A stretch of DNA of 64,000 nucleotides from positions 1 through 64,000 of IMG/VR virus record IMGVR_UViG_3300023296_000874, one strand, 5' to 3'. The position numbers were made by a program, and so were the translations under genes. Shown here in pieces: positions 11,188 to 62,064 of the stretch (its first letter is position 1; the number at the start of each line of letters is the position of its first letter). The notes under the pieces were generated by a model. The model was not told the origin of the DNA. It saw only the letters and a program-made list of their open reading frames with translations, and did no database searches.

Positions 11188-11215
11188 AACGAGTTGAGGG
11201 CAGAGAGAGTCAGAG
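11188..11215 (-). promoter_or_regulatory. putative phage promoter CTCTGAC-N17-CGTT
   Basis: Repeated bipartite motif with fixed spacing upstream of ATG 11164. Confidence 0.7.
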
Positions 11216-11229
11216 CCTTTTGCAGAAAA

Positions 11230-11622
11230 TCAGTTGGACGTCGTTGCACTCACCGGGTCGGGTGCGGTCGCCGGGTGTACCGAACGGATCATGTCCGGGT
11301 AGAAGTCGTGCGTGGAGCCAGCCGGGTGCAGCTTCTTGGTGCCACGGTCCTCGAGCAGTTCCACCTTGACGCGCTTCTTGTTCACGGTGAGCACTCGGAC
11401 ACGGGTCTTCTGCCCGTGAGAGGTACCGATCATCAGCTCGTCGCCGGAGTTGATCTCAGCGAGGTTCACCGTGGGAGTTGCCTCCGCGCCGATGATGCCG
11501 GGGTGTCCCAAGGCGCGTAGCTTGCGGTCTGCCTTCTTGCAGATCTTCGCGAGCATGTCTTGGTCTTCGATGCCGCCGACGGCATACAGGATGCCTTCCA
11601 GAACCTTGTCCATTGTCTTCAT
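11230..11622 (-). CDS. hypothetical protein with SH3/KOW-like C-terminal region
   Basis: INSGDELMIG...RVRVLTVNKKRVKVEL beta pattern. Confidence 0.65.
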   Translation of the reverse strand: MKTMDKVLEGILYAVGGIEDQDMLAKICKKADRKLRALGHPGIIGAEATPTVNLAEINSGDELMIGTSHGQKTRVRVLTVNKKRVKVELLEDRGTKKLHPAGSTHDFYPDMIRSVHPATAPDPVSATTSN

Positions 11623-11711
11623 CCTTTTCGGGGGGTTGAGGCATTGTGCCTCTGGTCATGTCCATCAACACTCACATGATGGCTGGAGTGTGAGTTCGAG
11701 TCTCTCGAAAC

Positions 11712-13259
11712 CTACGGAAGTCTGAGAATGTTGATGCCGTCGTCCGTGTGGCGCACCACCTCGTACCCGTGGCTGATGTAGTAGTCCTTCACCTTGCACA
11801 GGTCATGGGCAGCCACCGTGAGTCGCCTTGCAACAAAGGTCTCGGCTACGTGCTTGCCCACACCCATCCCACGGTAACCAGGTAGCAGGTACGCGGAGTT
11901 CCAGTCCTCATACTGAGCCACGAGCCCGGCGATTCTGCCCCATGCGATCACGGGCGTCAGCTTGCTCTCGGCAAGGATCTCTTCCTGTCCTACGTCACGG
12001 ATGTGCTGAGCCCATTCGAGCTTCACGTCTTCCCATTCCGAGCGCATGAACGCTACGTCACCATCACCGAACCCGATGAGCGTGCCGTGGTTCACAAGGT
12101 CCAGGGTCCAGCTCTGGGAGAGGCGGTACGGTCCGAGGCAGTGCAAGATCTCCTGCGCCTCTTGCACCGTTCCGCACGGGTACGGGTAGACGGTCTTGGT
12201 GTGCGGTACGACGTAGCCACCGTGGAAGTGCAGCAGCGCCTTGAGTCCCTTCATGTCGTGATAAAGGCGCGCGTGTACCGAGCAGTCGATGGAAGGCTTG
12301 ACAGTGCCATGAGCGCGCGTCAAACGATCAGAGATGTCAGCACTCGCAAAGATGAACTCGTCCGGCTTCACGTCACCCTTCTGCACACCGCGCGGGGTAG
12401 CCCAGAAGTGGGTGGGGATGGAGCTGATGAGCTGGGTCACGTTGCCGTCAGAGCTGTCAAGGAGGTTGGCCTCTTGAGCGAAGGCGAGCAGGGCTTGTGC
12501 CTCCTCCAAGGAGTCCACGAAGGTGTCCTTGGGGTCAACACCAGGGTAGAGCACGTCTTCGTCGTACAGCTCGGTCCTGCTCCACTGCACAGCTTGACGG
12601 TTGATGCAGAGGTCGACAATGGCTGCGGAAACATCCGTCTTGGAGCCTTCAAGCGGTATGGCCCCTCCCTCTGGGGTCACCGCGTAGCACGGATGCAGTC
12701 CCTTGTTCTCGGGGAGGCTGAGCTTGCTCCAATCGTTCGCGATGGTCAGGTTGATGCGACAGCTCTTCACCTGCGCCAGTGCCACGCTGATCAACTCATC
12801 GTCAGTCACGTCGCTCAGGAGCTTCCACCCTACGATGAAGGGACGGTTGGGCACCCACTCCCTCAGGTTGGCGAGGATCTTGGGCGTGCGCTTGAGGACG
12901 AGCGTCTGCTCGTCGTTCTTGGAGCGGATCTTCCCTTCCACGGGGACGGGAGCGTAGTCGCTGATGGCAGCGGGCATCAGGATGAAGTCGAAGTCACCCG
13001 TGTTTGCCAGGTCCTTCACTTGGTCGTAGAGCTCTTGGTACGTGCGGAACGTGTAGATGCCGCTCACGCCTCCGACGGTGTCCCCGTACATGCTCAAGGT
13101 GCGTTCAGCGGCGAGAAGCGTCACGTTGACACCCCTCGCCGCGAACAGATTGGCGACGGTACACCCGAACCGACCCTTGGAGCGGTTGGTGATGACGCGG
13201 ACGTCGTCGATGTCGACTTCCGTGCCTCCGGTCACGACAAGGGCTCTCAGTTCAGGCAT
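11712..13259 (-). CDS. CoaB (phosphopantothenate-cysteine ligase)-like domain fused to class II aldolase-like and GNAT-like domains
   Basis: VTGGTEVDIDDVRVITNRSKGRFG, AAISDY, LKRTPKIL, VGWKL, IAND (CoaB/DFP); GNVT...ATPRG...KPSIDCSVHARLY...LLHFH (aldolase II); YLLPGYRGMGVG (GNAT motif A). Confidence 0.8.
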   Translation of the reverse strand: MPELRALVVTGGTEVDIDDVRVITNRSKGRFGCTVANLFAARGVNVTLLAAERTLSMYGDTVGGVSGIYTFRTYQELYDQVKDLANTGDFDFILMPAAISDYAPVPVEGKIRSKNDEQTLVLKRTPKILANLREWVPNRPFIVGWKLLSDVTDDELISVALAQVKSCRINLTIANDWSKLSLPENKGLHPCYAVTPEGGAIPLEGSKTDVSAAIVDLCINRQAVQWSRTELYDEDVLYPGVDPKDTFVDSLEEAQALLAFAQEANLLDSSDGNVTQLISSIPTHFWATPRGVQKGDVKPDEFIFASADISDRLTRAHGTVKPSIDCSVHARLYHDMKGLKALLHFHGGYVVPHTKTVYPYPCGTVQEAQEILHCLGPYRLSQSWTLDLVNHGTLIGFGDGDVAFMRSEWEDVKLEWAQHIRDVGQEEILAESKLTPVIAWGRIAGLVAQYEDWNSAYLLPGYRGMGVGKHVAETFVARRLTVAAHDLCKVKDYYISHGYEVVRHTDDGINILRLP

Positions 13260-13273: not shown

Positions 13274-13951
13274 CTACTCGCCGTCCATGATCATGTCGAG
13301 CCGTGCGTGTCCGGGCTCAGGCCAGTAGGCATCGACGCTCTCCCAGTCCGGGTAGTTCGTGTCGAGGTACTCCTTGCACTGCCCCTTCATCCAGTCGTTC
13401 GTGGTCTTCTCGCGCTGGTACGCGGGGTCGCCGTAGGTGACGGTCAGGGGGATGTCGGGAGGGCACTCTGCACGGTTCACCGTGAGCAGCACCGTGTCAC
13501 CGTCCACCACCTTGCAGGTGAGGTCGTCGCTGTAGTCGTAGTCGATGCTGTAGCGACGGCAGAGGTTTCCACGGGCGTAGCGGTCGTAGGACGCTGCCTT
13601 GTAGAAGGTCGTGATGCGGGTGCGCCCGTCCTCGTCGACGATCTTGCCTGCTCGAGAGTCTTCTCCGCGCTCACGCTTCCACCCCGGAGGGAGCTGCGCA
13701 TCCTGGAAGATGGGGTCGCTGCCGGGGGACACCTTGATGCCCCACTTGGCGAGGGTCTTGAGTGCGTCGGCCCCACCGATGTCCACCGGGAGTTGAGTGG
13801 AGTTGAGGAACTCTCGGTTGCCTCGTGCTTCCTGAGCGAGGATGGCGTCCGAGCCCCTCCCGCCGATGAAGGTGTTGAGCATGGTCTCGCGGGCGAGCCG
13901 GGCTACTTCTTCCTTGGAGGTGGTGTCACCTACCTTGCGGTGTCCGGCCAT
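13274..13951 (-). CDS. hypothetical protein with C-terminal ARLDMIMDGE tag
   Basis: ATG 13951 in ATGA overlap with upstream stop. Confidence 0.75.
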   Translation of the reverse strand: MAGHRKVGDTTSKEEVARLARETMLNTFIGGRGSDAILAQEARGNREFLNSTQLPVDIGGADALKTLAKWGIKVSPGSDPIFQDAQLPPGWKRERGEDSRAGKIVDEDGRTRITTFYKAASYDRYARGNLCRRYSIDYDYSDDLTCKVVDGDTVLLTVNRAECPPDIPLTVTYGDPAYQREKTTNDWMKGQCKEYLDTNYPDWESVDAYWPEPGHARLDMIMDGE

Positions 13952-14190: not shown

Positions 14191-14248
14191 GGTGCTCTCC
14201 GTTCTTGGTTCATCACCTCAAACGTGAGATCAGGCCTCGAAGGTAAAC

Positions 14249-14812
14249 CTATTCGAGGTCTTCCGCACAATGGTCACAAGTCCGCTCACCCTTGATGTCC
14301 TTGGAGCAGTTGCCGCACACGGGGTCACCACACCCATAGCAGGTGTAGTCAGCCGCTTCGGTACCGTCGATAACTCCACCGCCGCTCATGTAGCCAGCAG
14401 GGGCCTCGCAGCCATAGTTCACCACGTTGCACGGGTCGCCCACGGGCTCGAAGTCGCCCTGAGCCTCACGCATCTCCCGGAAGGAGTCGTACACGGGAGC
14501 GTCCATGTCGAGTTCGGAGGGTTTGTAGAGGCCGAGGCGCTCTGCGATCCGCATCATCTGGTTGGGCGCGTTGCTCTTCTCGAGAAGGATCATGGCACCG
14601 GCACAGTGCTGCGCGTTGGGGCCGTCCACCATGTTCGAGGAGCCGTCTTCGTCATCCTCGCCAGCGACGGTGGTCTTGTGGCAGGTGAATGAGCGCTGCT
14701 GCCCAATGAGCTCGGCCTCCATCTCCTGAACGCGTCCTACACGGAGGTAGGGCGTGACGTCAGTGCGGAAAGGGCAGTTACTGCACGGCTTCTTCAGGGA
14801 ATATTCGCTCAC
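14249..14812 (-). CDS. Cys-rich metal-binding hypothetical protein
   Basis: KKPCSNCPFR, FTCHKT, HCAGA plus C-terminal CxxC pairs; GTG 14812 after ACGGAGG. Confidence 0.75.
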   Translation of the reverse strand: MSEYSLKKPCSNCPFRTDVTPYLRVGRVQEMEAELIGQQRSFTCHKTTVAGEDDEDGSSNMVDGPNAQHCAGAMILLEKSNAPNQMMRIAERLGLYKPSELDMDAPVYDSFREMREAQGDFEPVGDPCNVVNYGCEAPAGYMSGGGVIDGTEAADYTCYGCGDPVCGNCSKDIKGERTCDHCAEDLE

Positions 14813-14834
14813 GTAGCCTCCGTCATATCGTATC

Positions 14835-14862
14835 AACGGAGGCTACGGGCAAATAGTCAGAG
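14835..14862 (-). promoter_or_regulatory. putative phage promoter CTCTGAC-N17-CGTT inside 11-bp inverted repeat covering the SD
   Basis: GTAGCCTCCGT (14813-14823) / ACGGAGGCTAC (14836-14846) perfect inverted repeat. Confidence 0.75.
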
Positions 14863-15795: not shown

Positions 15796-15990
15796 TCAGC
15801 GACGCCAAGGCTGTCGAGCCCCGTCCCGTCGCCCGTCTCGCTTGGCGTTGCCCTCGAGGGTCTGGATGAATCGCCACATCTCTTGAGCAGCTCCTTCACT
15901 CATGTCGTCGACGGCCTTGAGGAGCTCAGGCTTGCGGCCCGCACCTTCCCGCGCGATTTTTGCCTTGAGTGCTTGCTTGATGCTGCCCAT
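15796..15990 (-). CDS. small hypothetical protein
   Basis: 64-aa ORF, ACGGAG SD, motif upstream. Confidence 0.7.
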   Translation of the reverse strand: MGSIKQALKAKIAREGAGRKPELLKAVDDMSEGAAQEMWRFIQTLEGNAKRDGRRDGARQPWRR

Positions 15991-16011: not shown

Positions 16012-16039
16012 AACGTAACGAACAGCTTGATAGTCAGAG
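16012..16039 (-). promoter_or_regulatory. putative phage promoter CTCTGAC-N17-CGTT
   Basis: Motif in divergent intergenic gap upstream of ATG 15990. Confidence 0.7.
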
Positions 16040-26734: not shown

Positions 26735-26762
26735 AACGTAGCCACGCGCTTCTATCTCAGAT
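26735..26762 (-). promoter_or_regulatory. putative phage promoter ATCTGAG-N17-CGTT
   Basis: Motif upstream of ATG 26710. Confidence 0.7.
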
Positions 26763-27921: not shown

Positions 27922-27949
27922 AACGCTCCGAGCTGGTCGGAAGTTAGAG
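27922..27949 (-). promoter_or_regulatory. putative phage promoter CTCTAAC-N17-CGTT, palindromic, possibly leaderless
   Basis: CTCTAAC/GTTAGAG and TCCGA/TCGGA inverted repeats; CGTT ends 8 nt before ATG 27913. Confidence 0.7.
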
Positions 27950-32768: not shown

Positions 32769-32796
32769 AACGCCTTTCGTAGCGTGAAAGTCAGAG
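32769..32796 (-). promoter_or_regulatory. putative phage promoter CTCTGAC-N17-CGTT
   Basis: Motif overlapping upstream stop codon. Confidence 0.7.
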
Positions 32797-33792: not shown

Positions 33793-33820
33793 AACGTGCC
33801 TACTTGCACGGAACTCAGGC
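33793..33820 (-). promoter_or_regulatory. putative phage promoter GCCTGAG-N17-CGTT, possibly leaderless
   Basis: CGTT ends 8 nt before ATG 33784; CGTGC/GCACG inverted repeat. Confidence 0.6.
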
Positions 33821-36975: not shown

Positions 36976-37002
36976 TGGTCTGCCTCTTGTTGTGTCCCCT
37001 CT

Positions 37003-37030
37003 AACGGGGAGCGGCACTCAGAAGTTAGAG
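37003..37030 (-). promoter_or_regulatory. putative phage promoter CTCTAAC-N17-CGTT, palindromic
   Basis: CCTCTAAC/GTTAGAGG inverted repeat spans the motif. Confidence 0.7.
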
Positions 37031-37549: not shown

Positions 37550-37822
37550 TCAGGCTGAAGGTTGCGTGCCGCCCGGCTTTTCTTGCTCCACCAGCTTGTA
37601 GTGCTTCATGTTCGTCATGAAGTTGTTGTAGAGAGCCCAGTTGTCCTGCTTGGACTTGATAAGGGTTCGCTCTTTCATCCGCTTGATCAAACCGGCAATC
37701 TCGGGCCTTGTGAGTGGCCGGTCGAAGTGCGTCTGCGCCGCCATGACGTTTCCGAAGATGATGGCGTTGATTGAGCGTGCTGATTTGAACGGCGACGGGC
37801 CGCTGATCCAGAAGGTTTTCAT
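37550..37822 (-). CDS. stand-alone copy of the repeat domain of 37901..39652
   Basis: FWISGPSPFK...INAIIF...LTRPEI...IKSKQ...LYNNFMTNMKHY aligns with the repeats. Confidence 0.7.
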   Translation of the reverse strand: MKTFWISGPSPFKSARSINAIIFGNVMAAQTHFDRPLTRPEIAGLIKRMKERTLIKSKQDNWALYNNFMTNMKHYKLVEQEKPGGTQPSA

Positions 37823-37900: not shown

Positions 37901-39652
37901 TCAGGCTGCAGCCGCCGCCACACACTGCTCGGGGTACCACTTGCGGAGCGTGTTGAGGAACTGGTAGCTGAGTTGGTCAGCGGGGCGTCGGCTCTTCGCC
38001 ATGCCGGAGGCAACCACCGCAGCGGCAATCCGCTCCACGTCGGCTTCCGTCCACGCGCCTTGGGTCACGAGGGTCACCCAGATGCTGTGGTTGATGCCGC
38101 GCCTGTAGGGGTTCTCACCCTTCAGGAGGTAGGAGGCAGAGGCCGGGTCAACAGCCGCAACGGGCGGGGCAGCAACCGGCTTGTCGCCGTCCACTTCCTT
38201 GTAGAGGCCCGCGTAGTCCTTGAGGTTGTTGTAGAACTGGTACCCGATCTGGTCAGCGGGTCGCCGGGTCTTGATCGTGCCCGCGTCAATCAACTGCTGA
38301 GTCACCGCGTCCACGTCGTCCCGTGTCCACGTACCCAGCGCAACCAACGCAGCCCAGATGCTGAAGTTGATGCCCCGTCGGTACGGGCTCGCTCCACAGA
38401 AGGCGTAGCGCACGGGCGTCGGCACGTTCACCGCGAGGCCTGTGATCACGGTCGCACGGGTCACCGCTGCTGCAACCACGTCACCCGGCATCACCGGGTT
38501 CTCTTCGGCACGCTCGATGGCCTTGTAGCCACGGGCGGTCTCGATGAACCCCCAGGCAATGCCGTCAGCCGGGCGTCGGGATTTGATCGCGCCGCTGTCG
38601 AGCAGTGCGTCCACCGTGGTCAGGAGGTCGTTGAAGTCGAAGGTGCCACGGGTCACGAGGGCGTCGTAGATGGGGTGGCTACCTGCCCAATGCTTGTACG
38701 GGTTCGGGATGCCTACGAAGCGGTAGCGTGTGCGCGCAGCGTGCTGAACTGCGCGGCCCCCTCGGGTATTACCGTTGGGGGCCGCTGTCTCTCCGATTGC
38801 TTCCTTCTCAAGTGCCACTGCCACGAAGGTTCCAGCTACCTCTTCGGGGCTGCGGCGGGAGGCGAACTTGCCTTGATCCATCAGTCGCCCGGTGATCACC
38901 ACAATCTCCCGCATCGTCACTGGGTTCCCGATGGCGTTCAGGGTGTCCCACAACACGTAGCACGAGCCTCGCTGGAAGGGGTTGTCGCCCTTCACGAGGT
39001 ACACCGGGCCGACGGAGGTGCTTGTGCGCTTCCGCTTGCTCGGCTTGGCTCCGTCCCTGGTCACCGCGAGGTACTCGGTGATGAGGGCGTGGAGGCTCTT
39101 CACGCGGTAGTGGATGGTCTCCTTGCGCTTGCCGATGATCCGGCTGATGTCTGCCGGGCGGTAGCCCATGGTCCGCAGGATGAAGGTGGGGAGGAACGCG
39201 GGCTTGCGCTCCGCGATGTACCGAATGAGATCCGATTCCACCACCTCTGCCGGAATGCTGAGCTCCGAGAGGTTGCTGGTCTGCTGCAACCGGTCGAGGT
39301 CCACCGTGCCGCGAGCGGGCTCGGAGTCGTCCGAGGGCACCGAGAGGCTCATGGCGTTGGTGTTGGCGTCCCGGTTGTCCTTCTTCCAGCCGTTCACGAG
39401 GCAGTTCCGGATGGTCGTACCGAGGTACGAACGGAACTGACGCGGAGTCATCAGCCCCGCATCTACCTTCTCCTTCACACGGGGGAAGAAGTTGGACGCC
39501 ATGCAGTGAATGATGATGTCCTGGAACTTGTCGTCGATGTCCTCTTCGGGAACCTTCTGTCCACGCAGTCCACCGATGATGTACTTGCGGAATGCCATGA
39601 GCTGGTTGACGTCCGTCGGGACGAAGTCCGTCTCGGTGTGTGTGCGTGCCAT
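37901..39652 (-). CDS. ECF sigma70-like factor fused to four ~70-aa repeats
   Basis: Region 2-like DDKFQDIII...FRSYLGTTIRNCLVNGWKK; region 4 HTH GYRPADISRIIGKRKETIHYRVKSL; four G-x-[NS]P[YF]...[KA][ST]RR[PS] repeats. Confidence 0.75.
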   Translation of the reverse strand: MARTHTETDFVPTDVNQLMAFRKYIIGGLRGQKVPEEDIDDKFQDIIIHCMASNFFPRVKEKVDAGLMTPRQFRSYLGTTIRNCLVNGWKKDNRDANTNAMSLSVPSDDSEPARGTVDLDRLQQTSNLSELSIPAEVVESDLIRYIAERKPAFLPTFILRTMGYRPADISRIIGKRKETIHYRVKSLHALITEYLAVTRDGAKPSKRKRTSTSVGPVYLVKGDNPFQRGSCYVLWDTLNAIGNPVTMREIVVITGRLMDQGKFASRRSPEEVAGTFVAVALEKEAIGETAAPNGNTRGGRAVQHAARTRYRFVGIPNPYKHWAGSHPIYDALVTRGTFDFNDLLTTVDALLDSGAIKSRRPADGIAWGFIETARGYKAIERAEENPVMPGDVVAAAVTRATVITGLAVNVPTPVRYAFCGASPYRRGINFSIWAALVALGTWTRDDVDAVTQQLIDAGTIKTRRPADQIGYQFYNNLKDYAGLYKEVDGDKPVAAPPVAAVDPASASYLLKGENPYRRGINHSIWVTLVTQGAWTEADVERIAAAVVASGMAKSRRPADQLSYQFLNTLRKWYPEQCVAAAAA

Positions 39653-39688: not shown

Positions 39689-39717
39689 AACGAACTGAGC
39701 CTACGAGAAACTCAGAG
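39689..39717 (-). promoter_or_regulatory. putative phage promoter CTCTGAG-N18-CGTT upstream of the sigma-like gene
   Basis: Same motif with 18-nt spacer. Confidence 0.6.
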
Positions 39718-40937: not shown

Positions 40938-40959
40938 GGCACCTCCGTTACCTCATGAT

Positions 40960-40987
40960 AACGTACCCAAGGGGGAGGTACTCAGAG
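40960..40987 (-). promoter_or_regulatory. putative phage promoter CTCTGAG-N17-CGTT
   Basis: Motif upstream of ATG 40937; TACCTC/GAGGTA inverted repeat. Confidence 0.7.
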
Positions 40988-50581: not shown

Positions 50582-51000
50582 ACTCCAATCTCCAGGTATG
50601 GGTTCTGAGGATCATTCGTGTTGGTGATGGCGATGATGCCGTCCAAATCTCTGAAAATGGTAGCCATCACTTCGTCGTAGGTGTTCCGGTTGATGATCTG
50701 GTCCCTGTGCTTGAGGCACTGACCCTCCGCGAGGAGGATGTCAGGGGTGTACCGCTCCATGGTGGAGGGCCTCCTGTCCAAGACGAGGAGCAGCCTCTTG
50801 TCCTCGTTGTTCGCCAGTTCGCGCCACCGAAGCAGGTACGCTGACCGGACCTGGTACATGGACAGCAACGAGGTCATTTCGACGTTGAGGTCTGCCCTTG
50901 CAGCCTCGGTAGCTGCAAGGGTTTGCATGGCTCCTTCTGACACCCCCTCTTCCGGAGGGGGGTCAATCTCAAGTAGGAGGTGAAGCCTATCGAGAGCCAC
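50578..51000 (-). CDS. hypothetical protein with N-terminal DRLHLLLEID tag
   Basis: Likely GTG start at 51000 overlapping prs end; ATGA coupling at 50578. Confidence 0.65.
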   Translation of the reverse strand: MALDRLHLLLEIDPPPEEGVSEGAMQTLAATEAARADLNVEMTSLLSMYQVRSAYLLRWRELANNEDKRLLLVLDRRPSTMERYTPDILLAEGQCLKHRDQIINRNTYDEVMATIFRDLDGIIAITNTNDPQNPYLEIGV

Positions 51001-51986: not shown

Positions 51987-53174
51987 TTAGAGGACGCTCT
52001 CTACGATACGAACGTAGAGGTCATCCAGCTTGTCCATGTCGGGGCTGTAAGGTAGCACGGGAGTGAGCTCGGGAAGGGGCTCGAGGCCCTTCTTCACCCG
52101 CGCAGTCACACGCTGCTTCTCGGTACCGTAGTACGATGTGTAGATGTCACCGAGAGCGGCGTTCTCGCGATCAGCCCAGTCCACCAACTCGTCGTAGGTC
52201 CAGGCACCCTTGCGGATAGCGAGGAGCTCTTCACGGTCGATCCCGCCGCGCCACACATGCACCTTGCCCGTCGTCAAGATCTCCCGTCCCATGCGGAGCA
52301 GGCGAACGAGGTGGGCACCGTGCTTGGTGTCGTAGCCGGAGGCAGCTTCCAGCGCAGCCCGCTTGGGGTTCCGCTGACGCTTCCAGGTCTCGAAGCTCTT
52401 CCAGTTCTTTTGGGCGTCCTTGTACCGCTTCTCACCCTTGAGGGCCTCGAGCAGTCCTTCGTCGATCCCGATGGAGCGTGCGGCAGCAATCCACAGTTCA
52501 TCGTCGGTGGTCACGCCGATGGTGGCGAGGGTCTCAGCGATGTTGTCCTTGGCGCGGATCTTCTCGCTGTCGGCCATTTCGCCGAAGTCCCACTTCCACT
52601 CGTCAAGCTGCTTGTCGATGGCGGCGAGGAGCACGTTGCGCTGATGCTGCGTCACCACTTCCTCACCGAGGCCAAACTCCTCGCGGGTCGGCTTGTGGGT
52701 CGGAGGGTTGAGCAACCAGGCCCGGTGTCCCTTGATGCGCTTGAGCTGCTGGAAGGCGTAGCCGGTGAAGCGGTGCTTGGCGGCTCCACTCAGGAAGAGG
52801 TCCCGGTGTTCGCGGAGCAACTGCCCGGCCCAGTTGTGCATGAGCAGCTCTTCGTCGCGGCAGAAGAGCACGTCGAGCATTCCGGGGTTGCAGTCGGCGG
52901 TCAGCTTCATGAACTTGCCGAGGCCGTACACGACGCCCTCGAGCTTCTCGCGTTCGGCGGCGTCCATCTGCTCGGCGTCGAGGTACTTGCGGAAGGGTTC
53001 CATCTGCCCAGGCTTGTCGCACTGGTCGAAACGCTTGCGGAAGGTCAAGTGGTACGGACGTGGAGGTAGGCAGACGCCCTTGAGGTCTACGTCCGAAGTG
53101 TCGGTGTGGAGCCCGTAAGCTCGGGAACCAGCCACTCCAACGAGGATCGCAGAGTCATGTAGGTCGAAATCCAT
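51987..53174 (-). CDS. predicted nucleotidyltransferase (Pol-beta superfamily, PF10127-like)
   Basis: GSRAYGLHTDTSDVDLKGV, NPGMLDVLF, GYDTKHGAHLVRLL. Confidence 0.85.
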   Translation of the reverse strand: MDFDLHDSAILVGVAGSRAYGLHTDTSDVDLKGVCLPPRPYHLTFRKRFDQCDKPGQMEPFRKYLDAEQMDAAEREKLEGVVYGLGKFMKLTADCNPGMLDVLFCRDEELLMHNWAGQLLREHRDLFLSGAAKHRFTGYAFQQLKRIKGHRAWLLNPPTHKPTREEFGLGEEVVTQHQRNVLLAAIDKQLDEWKWDFGEMADSEKIRAKDNIAETLATIGVTTDDELWIAAARSIGIDEGLLEALKGEKRYKDAQKNWKSFETWKRQRNPKRAALEAASGYDTKHGAHLVRLLRMGREILTTGKVHVWRGGIDREELLAIRKGAWTYDELVDWADRENAALGDIYTSYYGTEKQRVTARVKKGLEPLPELTPVLPYSPDMDKLDDLYVRIVESVL

Positions 53175-53198: not shown

Positions 53199-53226
53199 AA
53201 CGCCACGAAGGCCCTGAAAGTCAGAT
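53199..53226 (-). promoter_or_regulatory. putative phage promoter ATCTGAC-N17-CGTT
   Basis: Motif upstream of ATG 53174; GGCCTTC can pair with SD GGAGGCC. Confidence 0.7.
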
Positions 53227-53238: not shown

Positions 53239-53748
53239 TCAGATGTGTCGCATGGTGTCAGTGTTGCGGCGCTTGGCTTCCGCCTCGTTGAAATCCCGGT
53301 TGCGCCAACTGAACTCGTAGATGCTGAGGCGGCGCTTCTTCTCGTTCTGTCCATCAGGCTGGATGGTCACCGTCTTGTTGGTGATGCCCGTGATGGTGCC
53401 GATGTAGCTGAGGTTGTAGCTGTGGTACTCGGCTCGGTCACCCACATGGAAGGTGCGGCGGTACTCAGCGGCCCCGTCTACGCGGTTGGAGTTGATGCCG
53501 TGTAGGCGGATGAAGGTGTACTCGTCCACGTAGGCGTGATGGCCTTCAGCCACTTCACCCACGATCATCACCCCACCGCTGCGCCGATTCTTGGCCCGCA
53601 CGTTGTAGATCTGGTACAGGCCGAGCTTGCGGCTGACGGTCAACATGCGGTGAGCGGGGTCGGCGCACTCTGCTGCTTCGGTGCGTCCGGCAACCTCGTT
53701 GTCGCGGTCGTCGTCATCATCCATCAGCAGTGCAAGTCGGTCGATCAT
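53239..53748 (-). CDS. hypothetical protein with N-terminal DRLALLMDDD tag and SH3-like domain
   Basis: FHVGDRAEY...IGTITGITNKTVTI; AGGAG SD. Confidence 0.75.
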   Translation of the reverse strand: MIDRLALLMDDDDDRDNEVAGRTEAAECADPAHRMLTVSRKLGLYQIYNVRAKNRRSGGVMIVGEVAEGHHAYVDEYTFIRLHGINSNRVDGAAEYRRTFHVGDRAEYHSYNLSYIGTITGITNKTVTIQPDGQNEKKRRLSIYEFSWRNRDFNEAEAKRRNTDTMRHI

Positions 53749-53769: not shown

Positions 53770-53797
53770 AACGTAGCGACAGGGGGAGATCTCAGAG
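53770..53797 (-). promoter_or_regulatory. putative phage promoter CTCTGAG-N17-CGTT
   Basis: Motif upstream of ATG 53748. Confidence 0.7.
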
Positions 53798-53933: not shown

Positions 53934-54357
53934 CTGGGCTCCAAACTGGAAGGAAGCGTGCTTCCTCAAAGGTGTAGTCCCCTTCGACGGGGATGTTGTA
54001 GTTGTGGCTGAAGTGCATGACGTTGATACGTCCACGCTCATCAGCACGTCGGTCGATGTTGGCCTGAGCAGCCTCAGGGTCGTTGGCGAAGTACACCCAC
54101 TCCCACTGGAAGCTCGTCCCTCGCGGGAGCCACTTCATGATGGAGCCGAGTGCCCGGCCACGGTGGAGCGGTCCGATGAGATGTGGGTCGGTGATCACCA
54201 CTCCGACACCTTCAGCGTAGGCGGTCAGAACCTCGGCGCGGACAACTGAGATGGTGCGGGGGTCGTCAATGAGGGTGTAGCCCTGCGTGACGTACTCGCG
54301 CCTTGCCAGTTCTGTCTTGCCGGAGCCCGGTAGGCCCACGATGAAGGTGACGTTCAC
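53923..54357 (-). CDS. small P-loop kinase-like protein
   Basis: FIVGLPGSGKT; GTGA coupling. Confidence 0.75.
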   Translation of the reverse strand: MNVTFIVGLPGSGKTELARREYVTQGYTLIDDPRTISVVRAEVLTAYAEGVGVVITDPHLIGPLHRGRALGSIMKWLPRGTSFQWEWVYFANDPEAAQANIDRRADERGRINVMHFSHNYNIPVEGDYTFEEARFLPVWSPDAS

Positions 54358-55007
54358 TCGATCCACCCCTTGTTCCGGAAGTAGGAGAACAGGTCCTCCA
54401 CCTTGCAGAGCTTGTAGGCGTAGTTGGTGCAGTTGCCGTAGTACTCGTTCTCTTCACGCGTCCCCGTCTTCACTACGGAGTGGAGCAGGCTCTTGTACTG
54501 CAAGAAGCTGAGATCAGGCTTGATCTCCTCAAGCACCTTGTCCAGAGCTACCAACTCTTCGGGCTGGTTGCCGGTGGAGTAGCCGGTCGATTCTGCATCA
54601 TCCCAGCACGAGCCCCCACTCATGCCTCCGGTCTCCCATTCACAGAACAGGTACGCATCCTTCGTGGTCTTGGTCGCCTTGCGTCCATAGCCGTAGGATG
54701 CCCGGAAGGTGGGGTCCTGCTCACGGAAGCCGTTGCCCCAGTTGCCGACACTGATGTCAGCCTCCTCGCAGATCCGCTTCACACGGGTCACGAACACAGC
54801 GAGTGGGGACATGCTCCGGGTACTGACGTCCAGCCAGCCTTCGGAGACGCAGTAGTCCCTACCCTGTTCGGTCAGGACGCCGTCGTCGGTGATGAGGCAC
54901 TTGCGAACGAGCGCGTCCTTGGTCGCCTTGGGAGCGTCGAAAACGTCTCCCTCACACAACCGTCGCAGGATGCGGTCTTGTGCGTCTGTGGTCTTGATTC
55001 GCGGCAT
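54354..55007 (-). CDS. hypothetical protein
   Basis: 217-aa ORF, GGAGG SD. Confidence 0.75.
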   Translation of the reverse strand: MPRIKTTDAQDRILRRLCEGDVFDAPKATKDALVRKCLITDDGVLTEQGRDYCVSEGWLDVSTRSMSPLAVFVTRVKRICEEADISVGNWGNGFREQDPTFRASYGYGRKATKTTKDAYLFCEWETGGMSGGSCWDDAESTGYSTGNQPEELVALDKVLEEIKPDLSFLQYKSLLHSVVKTGTREENEYYGNCTNYAYKLCKVEDLFSYFRNKGWIE

Positions 55008-55028: not shown

Positions 55029-55055
55029 AACACTTTTCGTCCTTGGAAGTTAGAG
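55029..55055 (-). promoter_or_regulatory. putative phage promoter variant CTCTAAC-N16-TGTT
   Basis: Variant of motif; CTTCCAA/TTGGAAG inverted repeat. Confidence 0.55.
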
Positions 55056-55064: not shown

Positions 55065-55442
55065 TCAGATGAGTCCGGCCTTCACGGTCGCTACGGGAAA
55101 CTTGTACTTGCCGCCGCGCGGCCCAGTAGCACTCACCGGGTACTTGTAGCGGGTGAGCTTGAAGCCGGTCACCGTGTAGGTGGTCGGCCCCGATTTGAAC
55201 GTCCGGCCCATGAGGTCCTCGGGGAGGCCAAAGCCACGGCACGCGCTCAGGAAGGCTGCGCTAACGGCGGGCTTCCCATCATCACCGTTCACGGCGATGG
55301 TTTCGATGCGGAACTTGGCAGTGAGGCTGTCGAGGCCCAAGCTGCCACCGTCCGAAGTGATCGTCACCCCATGCTTGCGAGCAACCTCGGCGCAGGCGGC
55401 TTCCATATCTGCGGTGATCATGCGGGCGATTGCTCTGTTCAT
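55065..55442 (-). CDS. hypothetical protein
   Basis: 125-aa ORF, ACGGAG SD. Confidence 0.75.
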   Translation of the reverse strand: MNRAIARMITADMEAACAEVARKHGVTITSDGGSLGLDSLTAKFRIETIAVNGDDGKPAVSAAFLSACRGFGLPEDLMGRTFKSGPTTYTVTGFKLTRYKYPVSATGPRGGKYKFPVATVKAGLI

Positions 55443-55477: not shown

Positions 55478-55505
55478 AACGCCCGCTGCCCCCACGAACT
55501 CAGAG
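55478..55505 (-). promoter_or_regulatory. putative phage promoter CTCTGAG-N17-CGTT
   Basis: Motif upstream of ATG 55442. Confidence 0.7.
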
Positions 55506-58816: not shown

Positions 58817-60310
58817 TCACCTCATTGTCGGGAACAGAATCACGTCCCGAATTGATTGTGTGTCTGTCAACAGCATCACGAGCCGGTCGATGCCAATCCC
58901 CTCACCGGAGGTGGGAGGCATACCGAAGCTCAACGCGTCGATGTAGTCCTGGTCGAAGTACATGGCTTCATCGTCCCCGCGTGCCTTGGCAGCAGCCTGG
59001 GCCTGGAAACGAGCAGCCTGCTCAACGGGGTCGTTCAGCTCTTGGAAGCCGTTGGCGATTTCCATACCGGCGATGTAGAGCTCGAAGCGGTCTGCTACCT
59101 CTGGGTCATCAGCAGATGCTCGAGAGAGTGGGCTGATGTCCAAGGGGAATCCGGTCACGAAGGTCGGCTGGATCAGCTTGTCCTCAACGTACTCGTCGAA
59201 GTAGAGCTGGAACCACCGCCCGATGGTCCGGGGGAGCTTGGTAGCGTCCGGGTGGTCCTGTACCCACCTCGAGCGCATCTCGGGCATGGAGAAGGGGTCG
59301 TTGATGCCCGCGTGCTCCATGATCAGGTCGGCCATGCTCACGCGCCTGAAGGTGGTCAGGTCAAGCTCGTGCCCGTCGTAGGTGCAGACGTCCATCGGAA
59401 GGAACTCGCCAACCCGGCAGGCTTCCTCGTAGATGACGCGGTTGTTGGCACCACGGATGATGGCTTCGGTGGTGTCCATCAGGTCAGCCGGTGTGGCGTG
59501 GGCCTGATAGAACTCCAGCATGGTGAACTCGGGGTTGTGCGTCCCGTCCACTCCCTCGTTCCGGAAGTTGCGGTTCAGCTCGAACACTCGCTCGTAGCCA
59601 CCCACGATGAGCCTCTTGAGGTAGAGCTCAGGGGCGATGCGTAGGTAGAGGTCCTTGTCGAGAGCGTTGTGGTGCGTCACGAATGGTCGTGCGTTCGCAC
59701 CGCCTGGGAGCGTCTGCATCATCGGCGTCTCCACCTCCATGAACCGATGGTCTTCAAAGTACCTCCGGATGTAGGATACGATGGTGCTGCGCGCACGGAA
59801 CCGGTCGCGAGTGTCTTGGCTCACGATGAGGTCGAGGTACCGCTGACGGCGCTGCTGCTCCACGTCGGTGAACCCCGCGTGCTTGTCCGGCAGGCTCTTG
59901 ATGCACTTGGAGTAGAGCGCAAGGCTGTCCACCTTGAGGCTCAGGTCACCGCGTCGGGTACGGATGAGCTGCGCTTCTGCGTACACCCAGTCGCCGATGT
60001 CCAACTTCTTCCACACGTCGGCGTACATGACGGGGCCGATGCCCGCACGGCGCACGAACAACTGCATCCGGCTTTCGCCATCCTCGATGAAGGCGAAGCC
60101 AATCTTGCCCATCTCGTTCTTCTGGACGATGCGTCCGGCCACACGGTAGACGGTGGTCTGCGCCTCCAACTCCTCCGCGCTCAGATCAGCACCGATGCGC
60201 AAGATCTCGAGCAGCCGGTGGCTGAGGTCCTTGGAGACGGGATAGGGATCTACGCCTTCAGCGCGTAGTGCGTCCAACTTTTCCAGCCGTGCTGGTTCAA
60301 ATTCGCTCAC
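58817..60310 (-). CDS. lysS: class II lysine--tRNA ligase
   Basis: N-terminal OB anticodon-binding domain; YLRIAPELYLKRL, FRNEG...HNPEFTMLEFY, GMPPTSGEGIGIDRLVMLLT. Confidence 0.95.
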   Translation of the reverse strand: MSEFEPARLEKLDALRAEGVDPYPVSKDLSHRLLEILRIGADLSAEELEAQTTVYRVAGRIVQKNEMGKIGFAFIEDGESRMQLFVRRAGIGPVMYADVWKKLDIGDWVYAEAQLIRTRRGDLSLKVDSLALYSKCIKSLPDKHAGFTDVEQQRRQRYLDLIVSQDTRDRFRARSTIVSYIRRYFEDHRFMEVETPMMQTLPGGANARPFVTHHNALDKDLYLRIAPELYLKRLIVGGYERVFELNRNFRNEGVDGTHNPEFTMLEFYQAHATPADLMDTTEAIIRGANNRVIYEEACRVGEFLPMDVCTYDGHELDLTTFRRVSMADLIMEHAGINDPFSMPEMRSRWVQDHPDATKLPRTIGRWFQLYFDEYVEDKLIQPTFVTGFPLDISPLSRASADDPEVADRFELYIAGMEIANGFQELNDPVEQAARFQAQAAAKARGDDEAMYFDQDYIDALSFGMPPTSGEGIGIDRLVMLLTDTQSIRDVILFPTMR

Positions 60311-60436
60311 GGAGCCCTCCGTAGGTCTGCATTACCCCTGGGACGGGGACAGAGTGTTATTCGTGCGAACCCTATCTCAGTCGAGCAGTAGACTGATCAC
60401 AGTAGTCTCTTCGCCATTCGAGTGTGATGTGTGGCA

Positions 60437-62008
60437 TTAGGCTGCCGCAGCCACCGCTTCCGCGCGGGCTCGGGTACACGTCTCGATCAAGCTCAGGGTG
60501 ATGCCGTCCACGGCGGGTCGGTGTTCGAAGCCGTCACGTCGCGCCGAGTCACCGGGTCCGTACACACGCCAGCCCTTCGGGAGGTTGCCGTACTGACACA
60601 CCATCGTAGCGGGTCCGTGTGAGGGGTGAGCAGCGTTCTCGCGCACGGCGAGTACCGGGATGCCGGGGAGGCTCTGCTTCCCGCTCCAACCCTCTTCCAG
60701 CTCATCGCCGAACTTCATGGTCGGTCCGTACTTGGACGTCCAGGCGAGCTTGTAAACCATGCTCACCAAGCCACGTCGGTAGCCGGTGGGCTCCGGGCGG
60801 TCGATGAAGTAGCCGCCCGCGCCAAACAGCGTCACCTCTTCGGGGTAGTCAACCTCGATGCGGAGCGCCTCGTACCGTGCAACGTCCTTGTCGTCGATGC
60901 CGTCTTCAAATACCCACGGGCGGGGTCGGATGCCGCGTGCCTTGATCTCGCTCACGATGTAGCGGAACTGCTCCTCAAGGGAGCCGCTGTCGGGTCGCAT
61001 CCCGTCGTTCCGGTCCGGAAACTCTTCCATGAGCTTCAGGGCGGTCGGGATGCCCACCTTCATCGTGTCGTTGGTGTCGAGCAGCATGATCACGAGGGGC
61101 ATTGCGGCGATGTGTGCGCGGAAGGCGCGTTCGTCGTTGCCACCGTGGCGCATGATGCCCTCATGGCCCAGCGTGCCAACTGCCTTGATGTCCAGCACGT
61201 AGGCACCGTAGGCGTTGGAGGTCAGCGTGAAGCCGAGGTCCTTCAGAGCCTTGAGCGCGATGAGGTGCTGCTCCATGCAGGTTGCGGCGCGGAGGCCAAC
61301 CTCGAAGATGCGGTTCGGGCTCACGCCGGAGGCCAGCATCTTGATGCCCTGCAACTGCACCGCGTTGTAGTAGCTGAGCTCGTCCACGGTGATGCCGTTT
61401 TCGATGTCCCGCAGCTCCTGTCGGAAGTCGGCATCGCCGAAGTCCCTGCCCTTGTGGGCACCGAGGATCGCCTCCATGGTGAGCTCCTTCTGGCGCTCAC
61501 AGGTCACGGTGCGGATGGTCTCGAGGAAGGCGGGCATCGTGTCGCCCTCGCGGGCCTTGATGTAGGCGGTCGCTACCTGCATCTGGTAGCTGAAGCGTCC
61601 CGAAACCAACGGCTCGAGCCAGCTTGCGATGGCCTGAGGAGCTCGCACGGTAGCCACGGGCTCACGGGGAGCAGCGTACTCGCCAAAGGGTGTCGCGTAG
61701 AGCACCTCAAGGCTGGAGCCGTCCACGGAGTCCCACAGCATCTTCTCGGTCACGTTGAAGCCGAAGTGCTGCAGTAGCGCGCACTCTTCCTTCACGGTCG
61801 CTGAGGTGGGGTTGGGGATCATCTCGCGGATCGCCGTCTCGGGATCCACAGGCATGAACATGAGCCCGCCGCGTCGGAAGCTCAGATAGAACACTTCCTT
61901 CTCTTCGGGGCGTCCGCCAGCCATCATGGGCCACTTGTAGCCGTCCGATCCGAGGGTGCTTTCGCGCCAGGATCGCTTGCCTGCAAGTAGTTGTCGTAGA
62001 ATGCTCAT
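60437..62008 (-). CDS. nicotinate/nicotinamide phosphoribosyltransferase family protein
   Basis: SDGYK, GTLGHE, LLDT, RPDSG, FEDG, FGAGG, VYKL. Confidence 0.8.
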   Translation of the reverse strand: MSILRQLLAGKRSWRESTLGSDGYKWPMMAGGRPEEKEVFYLSFRRGGLMFMPVDPETAIREMIPNPTSATVKEECALLQHFGFNVTEKMLWDSVDGSSLEVLYATPFGEYAAPREPVATVRAPQAIASWLEPLVSGRFSYQMQVATAYIKAREGDTMPAFLETIRTVTCERQKELTMEAILGAHKGRDFGDADFRQELRDIENGITVDELSYYNAVQLQGIKMLASGVSPNRIFEVGLRAATCMEQHLIALKALKDLGFTLTSNAYGAYVLDIKAVGTLGHEGIMRHGGNDERAFRAHIAAMPLVIMLLDTNDTMKVGIPTALKLMEEFPDRNDGMRPDSGSLEEQFRYIVSEIKARGIRPRPWVFEDGIDDKDVARYEALRIEVDYPEEVTLFGAGGYFIDRPEPTGYRRGLVSMVYKLAWTSKYGPTMKFGDELEEGWSGKQSLPGIPVLAVRENAAHPSHGPATMVCQYGNLPKGWRVYGPGDSARRDGFEHRPAVDGITLSLIETCTRARAEAVAAAA

Positions 62009-62036
62009 AATTCCTCGGGTGTCCAGTTACTCCATC

Positions 62037-62064
62037 AACGACGGATACCCCGAGGAAGTTAGAG
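62037..62064 (-). promoter_or_regulatory. putative phage promoter CTCTAAC-N17-CGTT with spacer pairing to the SD
   Basis: TTCCTCGGGT (62011-62020) versus ACCCCGAGGAA (62047-62057). Confidence 0.75.

What the first reader, a model, noticed from the sequence alone, without database searches (positions are those of the whole stretch)
11188..62064. Sixteen copies of a fixed-spacing bipartite promoter motif, with a candidate cognate sigma factor in the same window
Seen on the minus strand: NTCT[GA]A[CG]-N17-CGTT at 11188, 14835, 16012, 22321, 26735, 27922, 32769, 37003, 40960, 53199, 53770, 55478 and 62037. Variants: 33793 (GCCTGAG), 39689 (N18) and 55029 (N16-TGTT). All lie just upstream of a co-oriented start codon. 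Established: a short CGT-containing -10 with a 16-18-nt spacer is typical of ECF sigma promoters. The 39689 copy precedes the ECF-like gene 37901..39652, matching the usual ECF autoregulation. Inference: a phage-specific regulon covering the NAD salvage enzyme, a nucleotidyltransferase, phosphatases and many small genes. A host ECF sigma is an alternative reader.
Basis: partly seen in the sequence, partly recalled or inferred. Interest (0 to 1): 0.82.

Follow-up and report, generated by a model that had tools for sequence, protein, structure and literature searches.

The report
Jumbo-phage ECF-type sigma and its promoters
A 257-kb uncultured phage carries 17 copies of one sharply defined two-part promoter in front of its metabolic and small genes, together with a very divergent ECF-type sigma factor (with an unusual four-repeat tail) that most likely reads them and switches on its own gene.

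Summary
TCTRAS-N17-CGTT has 14 exact matches, all on the minus strand, against 0.33 expected. The three variants at 33793, 39689 and 55029 are also real. A weight matrix splits sites cleanly (at least 20 bits versus at most 12). This is the top bipartite signal of the window, and 16 of 17 copies are intergenic.

I found a third element: a pyrimidine-A step 9 nt after CGTT. In seven cases, here and in relatives, that A is the A of the called ATG, so leaderless mRNAs are predicted. This places the start site where a -10 element requires it.

Residues 1-200 of the 583-aa protein (37901-39652, minus strand) are an ECF-type sigma by fold, though below the curated sequence cut-offs. The rest is four copies of an ~80-aa domain, and a free-standing copy is encoded just downstream.

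The sigma family is rare, about 13 clusters among 1.84 billion representatives. It always lies beside DUF1848, usually with NUDIX, in phage contigs of 37-63% GC. The same motif recurs there (CGTC or N16 in two lineages), including upstream of the sigma operon.

I judge this a phage sigma regulon with positive autoregulation. No transcription data exist. A host ECF reader is not excluded.

The parts
11188..11214 (-). Promoter copy, TCTGAC-N17-CGTT; 24 nt to the ATG of gene 10667-11164
   Evidence: 23.2 bits
14835..14861 (-). Promoter copy; 23 nt to the GTG of gene 14249-14812 (DUF6283). An 11-bp perfect inverted repeat joins the -10 region to the ribosome-binding site
   Evidence: (duplex -25.6 vs -12.4 +/- 2.6 kcal/mol)
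16012..16038 (-). Promoter copy; 22 nt to the ATG of ORF 15796-15990
   Evidence: 25.5 bits
22321..22347 (-). Promoter copy before the histidine phosphatase gene 21615-22298
26735..26761 (-). Promoter copy before small gene 26522-26710
27922..27948 (-). Promoter copy before the metallophosphatase gene 27137-27913. The predicted +1 A is the A of the ATG (leaderless). The same arrangement occurs before the Metallophos gene in L004, and one base further (A of the ATG at +10) in L005
31514..31540 (-). Either an internal promoter or the one chance match
   Evidence: 20.8 bits, not in the training set
32769..32795 (-). Promoter copy before gene 32500-32745
33793..33819 (-). Variant copy (CCTGAG); the predicted +1 A is the A of the ATG of ORF 33305-33784 (leaderless)
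   Evidence: (20.2 bits)
37003..37029 (-). Promoter copy with a 132-nt leader before gene 36233-36871; C at the predicted +1
39689..39716 (-). N18 variant, 37 nt before the sigma gene start: the proposed autoregulatory promoter
37901..39652 (-). 583-aa sigma candidate. Residues 1-200 are ECF-type sigma2 plus sigma4, joined by a ~45-residue low-confidence linker. Residues 213-583 are four ~80-aa repeats of a domain with a possible winged-helix fold
37550..37822 (-). 90-aa free-standing copy of the sigma tail repeat, immediately downstream of the sigma gene (the position usually held by an anti-sigma gene); conserved in L001, L004 and L005
   Evidence: (hhalign probability 97.3%, E 2e-11)
40960..40986 (-). 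Promoter copy heading the operon DUF1848 (40056-40937) - small gene (39816-40055) - sigma
53199..53225 (-). Promoter copy heading a run of about 20 co-oriented genes with no further copy down to the next one at 40960 (RlaP nucleotidyltransferase, PRPP synthetase, polynucleotide kinase-phosphatase, isochorismatase, NUDIX)
53770..53796 (-). Promoter copy before gene 53239-53748
55029..55054 (-). Variant copy (N16, TGTT) before gene 54354-55007
55478..55504 (-). Promoter copy before gene 55065-55442
62037..62063 (-). Promoter copy before the NAMPT-like gene 60437-62008, followed by a class II tRNA synthetase and an ATP-grasp gene. The spacer pairs with the ribosome-binding site
   Evidence: (-21.6 vs -10.4 +/- 2.7 kcal/mol)

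Best explanation
The 17 sites are promoters of one class, with four elements: -35 cTCTGAsTT, a 17-nt non-conserved spacer, -10 CGTTR, and a pyrimidine-A start 9 nt after CGTT.

They are read by host core RNA polymerase carrying the phage's own ECF-type sigma, which is the N-terminal 200 residues of the 583-aa protein at 37901-39652. The sigma gene sits behind two such promoters (40960 and 39689), so it reinforces its own synthesis.

The regulon is a 51-kb co-oriented block. It includes NAD salvage (NAMPT-like enzyme, PRPP synthetase, isochorismatase, NUDIX), RNA-end repair enzymes, a tRNA synthetase, phosphatases and many small genes. A subset of its mRNAs is leaderless.

Shown by sequence and computation: the motif is real, strand- and position-specific, and conserved in relatives. 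The protein has an ECF sigma fold.

Inferred: the motif is a promoter, this sigma reads it, and transcription starts at the conserved A.

Unknown: what the four tail repeats and their free-standing paralogue do, and how the first sigma molecules are made.
For: (1) Non-random, strand-specific and intergenic distribution.

(2) Geometry identical to mapped ECF promoters, GGAACN-N16-CGTT.

(3) Nine nt after CGTT there is an A in 12 of 17 window sites and in 21 of 28 sites overall. It is a purine in 26 of 28, and the preceding base is a pyrimidine in 22 of 28. In the window (27922, 33793) and in L004, L005, L006 and L019, that A is the first base of the ATG, which in the loci was called independently. 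Transcription must therefore start within 9 nt of CGTT.

(4) Sigma fold: the top 25 Foldseek PDB hits are ECF sigmas covering both domains (best 9m9e_F, M. tuberculosis complex, E 7e-4, probability 1.0; annotated sigmas H, L, E, AlgU, CnrH, BldN and phiEco32 gp36 follow). BFVD hits are phage ECF-type sigmas. TIGR02937 matches nearly its whole length in all five family members tested (E 5e-4 to 9e-3). The family profile reaches P0031, which passes Pfam's Sigma70_r2 cut-off.

(5) Linkage across lineages. In relatives whose sigmas are 41-63% identical over the N-terminal domain, from contigs of 39-63% GC, the motif recurs on the coding strand only. Counts are L001 2, L004 1, L005+L006 6, L011 1, L012 1 and none on the other strand. 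L016 has TCTGAS-N17-CGTC before both DUF1848 and sigma. L014 has five copies of TCTGAC-N16-CGTCT, four of them exactly 30 nt before a start and one a tandem duplicate 62 nt upstream. In L019 the copies follow gene orientation on both strands.

(6) The sigma4 recognition helix GK(R/K)KETIHYR is the most conserved block of the protein, matching the invariant -35 element.

(7) No sigma70-type promoter enrichment in 26-45 kb and no second enriched dyad.
Against: No transcription or binding data exist.

Sequence-level support for 'sigma' is below the curated cut-offs (Pfam finds nothing at E <= 0.01 for the full protein; TIGR02937 scores 15.6 bits against a 42.9 cut-off). A profile search of PDB sequences found no sigma. 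Fold matches have low TM-scores (0.26-0.37) because the two domains are placed differently.

If every promoter of the sigma gene needs the sigma, something else must start the circuit. I found only a weak candidate by eye (TTGTGA-N15-TACAAT about 100 nt upstream), and it is not conserved in relatives.

My one attempt to link a sigma2 residue (G78 versus S) with CGTT versus CGTC failed.

Only contig positions 1-64000, plus about 2 kb more through L013, could be read. The distribution of the motif over the other 190 kb is unknown.
Confidence: 0.72

Rival explanations
1. The sites are ECF-type promoters, but a host ECF sigma reads them. The phage protein would recognise something else or have another role.
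For: The motif shares its geometry and its CGTT -10 with cellular ECF promoters. A host reader would solve the start-up problem for the sigma gene. The host is unknown, so its sigma repertoire could not be checked.
Against: The motif travels with the phage sigma family across contigs of 39-63% GC from groundwater, marine and other samples. These phages probably infect different hosts. No second enriched motif exists for the phage sigma to read. The -35 box begins TCT instead of the GG of cellular ECF promoters, and it is invariant across the phage lineages, as is the sigma4 recognition helix.
Confidence: 0.15
2. The sites are promoters read by a different phage-encoded polymerase or factor that lies outside the window, not by this sigma.
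For: About 190 kb of the contig could not be inspected, and some jumbo phages encode their own polymerases (PMC7824862).
Against: Bipartite boxes separated by a fixed, non-conserved 17-nt spacer are the signature of sigma-dependent recognition. According to the review read, jumbo phages that encode sigma factors lack their own polymerase, and those with their own multisubunit polymerase lack sigma factors. The motif lies upstream of the sigma operon in six lineages (window, L001, L004, L005/L006, L016).
Confidence: 0.06
3. The sites are not promoters. They would be an RNA-level signal (processing site, terminator, translation element) or an operator for a DNA-binding regulator.
For: An RNA signal would also be strand-specific and intergenic. 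Two copies (27922, 37003) happen to be palindromic, TCTAAC...GTTAGA. Two copies pair with the downstream ribosome-binding site.
Against: The two boxes are not complementary, and the 27-nt sites do not fold better than shuffles (mean z -0.26). Intrinsic terminators are not enriched. Fifteen of 17 copies are not palindromic. Rfam finds nothing. The fixed 8-nt distance to leaderless ATGs fits a start site.
Confidence: 0.04

Closest known systems
Cellular ECF (group 4) sigma factors of the SigH/SigE/SigR type and their promoters (GGAAC-N17-18-cGTT; PMC10012870)
   Same: Two-domain sigma2-sigma4 fold. Bipartite promoter with an A(A/G)C-type -35 and a CGTT -10 at the same spacing. The sigma's own gene lies behind its promoter, which is the usual ECF autoregulation (PMC7826278).
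   Different: The -35 box begins TCT rather than GG. The sequence is too divergent for Pfam or NCBIfam cut-offs. There is a 380-residue tail of four repeats, no recognisable anti-sigma, and the gene is phage-borne. No relative was found in one genome for each of 185,579 species.
Salmonella phage 7-11 gp47 and coliphage phiEco32 gp36 (phage-encoded sigma factors with mapped promoters; PMC8948821, PMC12276001)
   Same: A phage-encoded divergent sigma redirects host core polymerase to a phage-specific promoter class, with start sites 6-9 bp from the -10-like element. 7-11 gp47 uses a bipartite motif with a 16-nt spacer. phiEco32 gp36 (9m7y_F) is among the fold matches.
   Different: The motifs are unrelated (GTAAtg-N16-aCTA and tAATGTAtA). 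Those sigmas are about 200 aa without repeats, drive late or middle structural genes of 70-kb podophages, and are not reported as autoregulated. No sequence similarity was detected.
ECF groups with regulatory C-terminal extensions (ECF41, ECF42 and others; Casas-Pastor et al. 2021, PMC7826278)
   Same: An ECF core fused to a large C-terminal extension, in place of a separate classical anti-sigma.
   Different: To my knowledge, the extensions of the best-known groups are single SnoaL-like (ECF41) or TPR (ECF42) domains. Here the extension is 2-4 tandem copies of an unnamed ~80-aa domain with a possible winged-helix fold, plus a free-standing paralogue encoded next door. Whether it regulates the sigma at all is untested.
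T4 lysozyme (e), soc and I-TevI: late promoters that start inside a hairpin which hides the ribosome-binding site in longer early transcripts (from my own knowledge; not checked in the library)
   Same: At 14835 and 62037 the promoter spacer/-10 region pairs with the downstream Shine-Dalgarno sequence. Only transcripts started at that promoter would have a free ribosome-binding site.
   Different: This is significant at only 2 of 17 sites, so it is not a general property of the class.

Membership tests
Sigma-70 family, group 4 (ECF) sigma factors | Sequence match to the sigma2 and sigma4 models at curated thresholds (Pfam Sigma70_r2 / Sigma70_r4_2, TIGR02937) | tested here: not met
   Pfam finds no family at E <= 0.01 for the full protein. 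TIGR02937 scores 15.6 bits against a 42.9 cut-off, although the match is near full-length in all five family members tested. Sigma70_r2 reaches 13-16 bits in three homologues against a cut-off of 24. Indirect link: the family profile hits P0031 (E 1.8e-4), which itself passes Sigma70_r2 (29.7 > 24).
Sigma-70 family, group 4 (ECF) sigma factors | Two-domain fold: sigma2 helical bundle plus sigma4 helix-turn-helix, with no region 1.1 or region 3 | tested here: met
   The AF2 model of residues 1-205 has pLDDT 85-92 over both domains. The top 25 Foldseek PDB matches are all ECF sigmas, aligned over 175-207 columns, with probabilities 0.66-1.0 (mostly above 0.9) and best E 7e-4. The sigma4 domain alone matches SigC domain 4 at TM 0.71, rmsd 1.8 A.
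Sigma-70 family, group 4 (ECF) sigma factors | Binds core RNA polymerase and directs initiation | not testable with these tools
   Needs pull-down or in vitro transcription.
ECF-type promoter | Bipartite -35/-10 with a 16-18-nt spacer and a CGT-containing -10 | tested here: met
   TCTRAS-N17-CGTT in 15 copies, with one N18 and one N16 variant. The spacing equals that of GGAACN-N16-CGTT.
ECF-type promoter | Transcription starts a few bases downstream of the -10 element | tested here: inconclusive
   There is a conserved pyrimidine-A step at CGTT+8/+9, and seven start codons lie exactly there. This is a sequence inference only; no 5' ends have been mapped.
ECF autoregulatory circuit | The cognate promoter lies upstream of the sigma gene or operon | tested here: met
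   Window 39689 and 40960. L005 1252 and L006 3626 lie directly before sigma. L001 8837 and L016 1121 and 2028 lie before DUF1848 and sigma.
ECF sigma/anti-sigma pair | A co-transcribed anti-sigma with a recognisable anti-sigma domain (ASD/ZAS, RskA, NepR etc.) | tested here: not met
   I did not scan the downstream 90-aa gene against Pfam. Pfam hits precomputed for its orthologues in L001, L004 and L005 list none. It is instead a paralogue of the sigma's own tail repeat. ESM Atlas gives only weak winged-helix-like structural leads.

The most novel reading that the evidence does not exclude
The sigma's tail (2-4 tandem copies of an unnamed ~80-aa domain) and the free-standing single-copy paralogue encoded just downstream form a new kind of sigma control module. 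The tail would tether or gate the ECF core, through the host polymerase or another partner. The free copy would compete for the same partner and so act as a timer or anti-sigma by mimicry. On this reading, a small clade of jumbo phages carries a self-contained, self-amplifying transcription switch that is independent of host sigma factors and issues leaderless mRNAs.
Probability: 0.25. Interest if true: 0.75.

Novelty: new variant of a known kind. Interest (0 to 1): 0.58.

Why it matters
Phage-encoded sigma factors with mapped promoters are few: T4 gp55, SPO1 gp28 and gp34, phiEco32 gp36 and 7-11 gp47. The current ECF classification explicitly misses phage ECFs (PMC7826278).

This locus gives a complete, testable pair: a sharply defined promoter with a predicted start base, and a candidate sigma. 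It also comes with a natural series of relatives in which the -10 box (CGTT or CGTC) and the spacer (17 or 16 nt) vary.

It would explain how an uncultured jumbo phage without recognisable sigma70 promoters in this region drives its NAD-salvage and RNA-repair genes. It would also supply an orthogonal sigma/promoter pair for synthetic biology. The repeat tail with its free paralogue has no characterised counterpart that I know of among sigma factors.

Tried and rejected
- GenBank phage searches: DNA with 8 kb of the window and tblastn with the sigma found no match.
- PDB sequence searches, single sequence and profile, found no sigma. Only the fold searches found one.
- IMG/VR scan returned only the window's own contig. 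The genome-contig scan found no relative.
- Walking along the 257-kb contig failed. The look-up returned a 15.6-kb contig of a variant strain (L013) that reaches only about 2 kb past the window. It does carry one further copy there.
- General pairing of the promoter spacer with the Shine-Dalgarno sequence: mean z -1.0, significant at only 2 of 17 sites. Rejected as a property of the class.
- Hairpin within the motif: mean z -0.26. Rejected.
- Palindromic operator: only 2 of 17 copies. Rejected.
- A conserved element upstream of -35 that the tail repeats might bind: information content is 0.7 bit or less (only a weak A-rich patch at about -7 to -5), so no support.
- A second promoter class for the plus-strand genes and for the 1-10.4 kb region: none seen by eye or by the dyad scan. 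Sigma70-like sites are at or below chance.
- Covariation of sigma2 residue 78 (G versus S) with CGTT versus CGTC: contradicted by L019, which has S and CGTT.
- Structured RNA in the 132-nt leader at 37003: z -1.08, and Rfam finds nothing in the window.
- A conserved sigma70-type promoter upstream of the sigma genes of relatives: none.

Full report
**Observation**

The pattern TCTRAS-N17-CGTT has 14 exact matches in the 64-kb window, all on the minus strand. Shuffles give 0.33 on average and never more than 2. The fourteenth, 31514, was missed.

The three variants are as described: 33793 has CCTGAG, 39689 has an 18-nt spacer, and 55029 has a 16-nt spacer and TGTT. With one mismatch allowed, the plus strand yields 14 background hits and the minus strand six besides the two real variants, so the exact class stands far above noise.

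A weight matrix built from the intergenic N17 copies scores 15 minus-strand sites at 20-25.5 bits, including 31514, which was not used for training. Nothing else exceeds 12.1 bits on either strand. An unbiased count of every 5-mer/gap/4-mer dyad puts TCTGA-N18-CGTT first in the window, and no other dyad comes close.

Fourteen of the 15 exact N17/N18 sites lie outside called genes, although 83% of the window is coding (P = 2e-10). The extended consensus is c-TCTGA(C/G)T(T/A)c ... CGTT(G/A).

**Anatomy around the sites**

The window is positions 1-64000 of a 257,533-bp contig, IMGVR_UViG_3300023296_000874, also recorded as Ga0222664_1000010. It is 60% GC, has no tRNA genes and has no close relative among GenBank phages. 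From about 10.4 kb onward nearly all genes are on the minus strand.

The distance from CGTT to the start codon is 22-25 nt for nine sites, and 29-37 nt for three more. It is 9 nt for two sites, 75 nt for the intragenic 31514 and 132 nt for 37003.

Nine nt after CGTT there is an A in 12 of 17 window sites. Counting the copies in related phages, it is an A in 21 of 28 and a purine in 26 of 28. The base before it is a pyrimidine in 22 of 28. This is the classical pyrimidine(-1)/purine(+1) start step.

At 27922 (metallophosphatase) and 33793, this A is the A of the ATG. The same is true at independently called gene starts in L004 (17705), L005 (9558), L006 (864 and 2193) and L019. For those genes to be translated from this transcript, transcription must begin within 9 nt of CGTT. 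That is where a -10 element places it, and it predicts leaderless mRNAs.

The sites do not fold (mean z -0.26). Fifteen of 17 are not palindromic. Sigma70-like promoters and intrinsic terminators are not enriched nearby. Rfam finds nothing in the window.

**The candidate sigma**

The 583-aa product of 37901-39652 has no Pfam family and only a weak PHROG hit to a family annotated as sigma factor (phrog_1740, E 8e-5). Homologues are few. The word-indexed search found eight proteins. An exhaustive profile search of 1.84 billion cluster representatives found 32 with E <= 1e-3, of which about 13 are full-length family clusters.

Their alignment shows a conserved N-terminal ~195 residues with the pattern of an ECF sigma. 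There is a region-2-like block, FRAYLGTTIxNxLVN..K...R, then a variable acidic linker, then a region-4-like block ending in GK(R/K)KETIHYR.KAL.

TIGR02937 (sigma70-ECF) aligns over nearly its whole length in all five family members tested, but at 15-20 bits against a 42.9 cut-off. Membership by sequence threshold is therefore not met.

Membership by fold is met. AlphaFold models (pLDDT 85-92 over both domains) retrieve ECF sigmas as the top 25 PDB matches. The best is 9m9e_F, from an M. tuberculosis initiation complex (E 7e-4, probability 1.0). SigH, SigL, E. coli sigmaE, EcfG, AlgU, CnrH, BldN and SigK follow, with phiEco32 gp36 also in the list and SigW a few ranks lower. TM-scores are low (about 0.3) because the two domains are oriented differently. 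Domain 4 alone matches SigC domain 4 at TM 0.71.

BFVD matches are phage proteins annotated as ECF-type sigmas. ESM Atlas features (0.96-0.97) point to Sigma70_r2/r4_2 clusters. The family profile also reaches P0031, which passes Pfam's Sigma70_r2 cut-off.

**The tail**

Residues 213-583 are four copies of an ~80-aa unit, (Y/W)-x-x-x-G-x-NP(F/Y)...RG... followed by three helices and a strand. Homologues carry two to four copies.

The 90-aa gene immediately downstream (37550-37822) is a free-standing copy of this unit. The profile-profile comparison gives probability 97.3%, E 2e-11 over 72 columns. Reciprocal hmmsearch gives E of about 5e-6, and no other ORF of the window matches. This gene is conserved in the same position in L001, L004 and L005.

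The unit has no Pfam name, and the structural leads are winged-helix-like only. It also occurs as two copies behind unrelated N-termini in proteins of 240-305 aa. I found no conserved DNA element upstream of -35 that it might bind. Its role is unknown.

**Comparative evidence linking motif and sigma**

Every sigma homologue whose neighbourhood could be read lies just downstream of DUF1848, in most loci with a NUDIX gene nearby and, in several, a small gene between DUF1848 and sigma. The contigs are phage-like, reach up to 367 kb, have 37-63% GC, and come from groundwater, marine and other metagenomes.

Exact TCTRAS-N17-CGTT occurs in these loci on the coding strand only. The counts are L001 2, L004 1, L005 and L006 together 6 distinct, L011 1 and L012 1, with none on the other strand. 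I estimate about 0.3 expected per strand for the ~85 kb of non-redundant sequence. The copies include ones directly upstream of the sigma gene (L005 1252, L006 3626) and of the DUF1848-sigma operon (L001 8837).

More distant lineages show informative variation:
- L016 has TCTGAS-N17-CGTC before both DUF1848 and sigma.
- L014, a 245-kb marine contig whose sigma is 41% identical, has five copies of TCTGAC-N16-CGTCT. Four lie exactly 30 nt before a start and share a conserved leader. The fifth is a tandem duplicate 62 nt upstream of one of those starts.
- L019, a 367-kb contig, has TCTRAG-N17-CGTT on both strands, following gene orientation.

A strain variant (L013) has a different spacer and an extra small gene before the NAMPT-like gene, yet keeps both boxes. 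The -35 box is constant across all lineages, and so is the sigma4 recognition helix. I could not tie the CGTT/CGTC difference to a sigma2 residue, because G78/S fails in L019.

**Interpretation**

The geometry equals that of mapped actinobacterial SigH/SigE promoters. GGAACN-N16-CGTT compares with CT[AG]A[CG]T-N16-CGTT here. ECF sigmas typically drive their own genes (PMC7826278).

The simplest reading is a phage ECF-type sigma that recruits host core polymerase to a phage-specific promoter class and amplifies itself. According to the comparative review read, jumbo phages that encode sigma factors lack their own polymerase.

The regulon in the window spans 11-62 kb. It covers:
- a NAMPT-like enzyme, PRPP synthetase, isochorismatase and NUDIX, which together look like NAD salvage;
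- polynucleotide kinase-phosphatase and RlaP nucleotidyltransferase, which look like RNA repair;
- a class II aminoacyl-tRNA synthetase, histidine and metallo-phosphatases, an ATP-grasp enzyme and many small ORFs.

The region 1-10.4 kb (peptidoglycan-binding protein, dNMP kinase, methyltransferase) has no copy.

The main weakness is the absence of any transcription data. The second is start-up: both promoters ahead of the sigma gene are of its own class, and I found no convincing conserved sigma70 promoter there. A host ECF with overlapping specificity, read-through, or delivery of the protein with the DNA are all possible.

**Comparison and novelty**

Phage sigmas with their own promoters are known. 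7-11 gp47 uses GTAAtg-N16-aCTA and phiEco32 gp36 uses tAATGTAtA, so the kind is not new.

What is new:
- The family is absent from GenBank phages and from one genome for each of 185,579 species.
- It is invisible to curated sigma models.
- It has an ECF core followed by 2-4 tandem repeats, with a free paralogue in the anti-sigma position.
- The promoter class is conserved across lineages and is predicted to give leaderless starts.

I rate it a new variant of a known kind, of moderate to good interest.

Noticed in passing
window 37550-37822 (-): A 90-aa gene just downstream of the sigma gene is a single free-standing copy of the ~80-aa unit that is repeated four times in the sigma's tail (hhalign probability 97.3%, E 2e-11). 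It is conserved at the same position in L001, L004 and L005.
   Followed up: yes
window 39816-41775 (-); L001, L004, L006, L014, L016, L017, L019: The cassette DUF1848-(small gene)-sigma, usually with a NUDIX gene nearby, is conserved across phage contigs of 37-63% GC and up to 367 kb. The role of DUF1848 next to the sigma is unexplained.
   Followed up: partly
window 14812-14861 and 62008-62063 (-): The promoter spacer/-10 region is complementary to the downstream Shine-Dalgarno region: an 11-bp perfect repeat GTAGCCTCCGT/ACGGAGGCTAC at 14835, and TTCCTCGGG/CCCGAGGAA at 62037. Read-through transcripts would hide the ribosome-binding site and promoter-initiated ones would not, as described for T4 lysozyme. 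It is significant at only these 2 of 17 sites.
   Followed up: partly
window 41197-62008 (-): An apparent NAD-salvage set: NAMPT-like (60437-62008), PRPP synthetase (50987-51973), isochorismatase/nicotinamidase-like (46091-46822) and NUDIX (41197-41775). Next to it are a class II D/K/N-type tRNA synthetase (58817-60310), polynucleotide kinase-phosphatase (49352-50323) and RlaP nucleotidyltransferase (51987-53174).
   Followed up: partly
window 11712-13259 (-): A 515-aa fusion of a DFP C-terminal domain (phosphopantothenoylcysteine synthetase-like) with a class II aldolase/adducin domain, which is unusual for a phage.
   Followed up: no
window 36872-37002 (-): A 132-nt leader lies between the 37003 promoter and gene 36233-36871. 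It contains a 7-codon mini-ORF (ATGACCCGGATCGCAGAGACGTAA). Folding is not better than shuffles (z -1.08) and Rfam has no match.
   Followed up: partly
L014 2047-2110: A tandem duplication of a whole promoter (GACTTTTTGGGTGCTCGTGCGTCTCTTACCTG twice). All L014 copies share a conserved leader, GTACCCACTACGGAGAAAC, ending 30 nt after CGTC. L014 also encodes an IF3 homologue (13277-13804).
   Followed up: no
L013 3667-3990 versus window 62009-62084: A strain variant of the same phage has an extra 64-aa gene and a promoter with a completely different spacer before the NAMPT-like gene, yet keeps both boxes. L013 591-617 is one more copy, lying beyond the window's end (about 65 kb on the contig).
   Followed up: partly
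window 11690-11711, 14230-14248, 39800-39815, 50970-50986 (-): Several promoter-less intergenic regions begin, right at the stop codon, with TAGG(T/C)TT(T/C) or TAGACTTC. This may be stop-codon context or an unrecognised signal, and was seen only by eye.
   Followed up: no
P0016, P0018-P0026: The sigma-tail repeat also occurs as two copies behind unrelated ~50-85-residue N-termini in proteins of 240-305 aa with no Pfam family. The repeat is therefore a mobile domain and not restricted to sigmas.
   Followed up: partly
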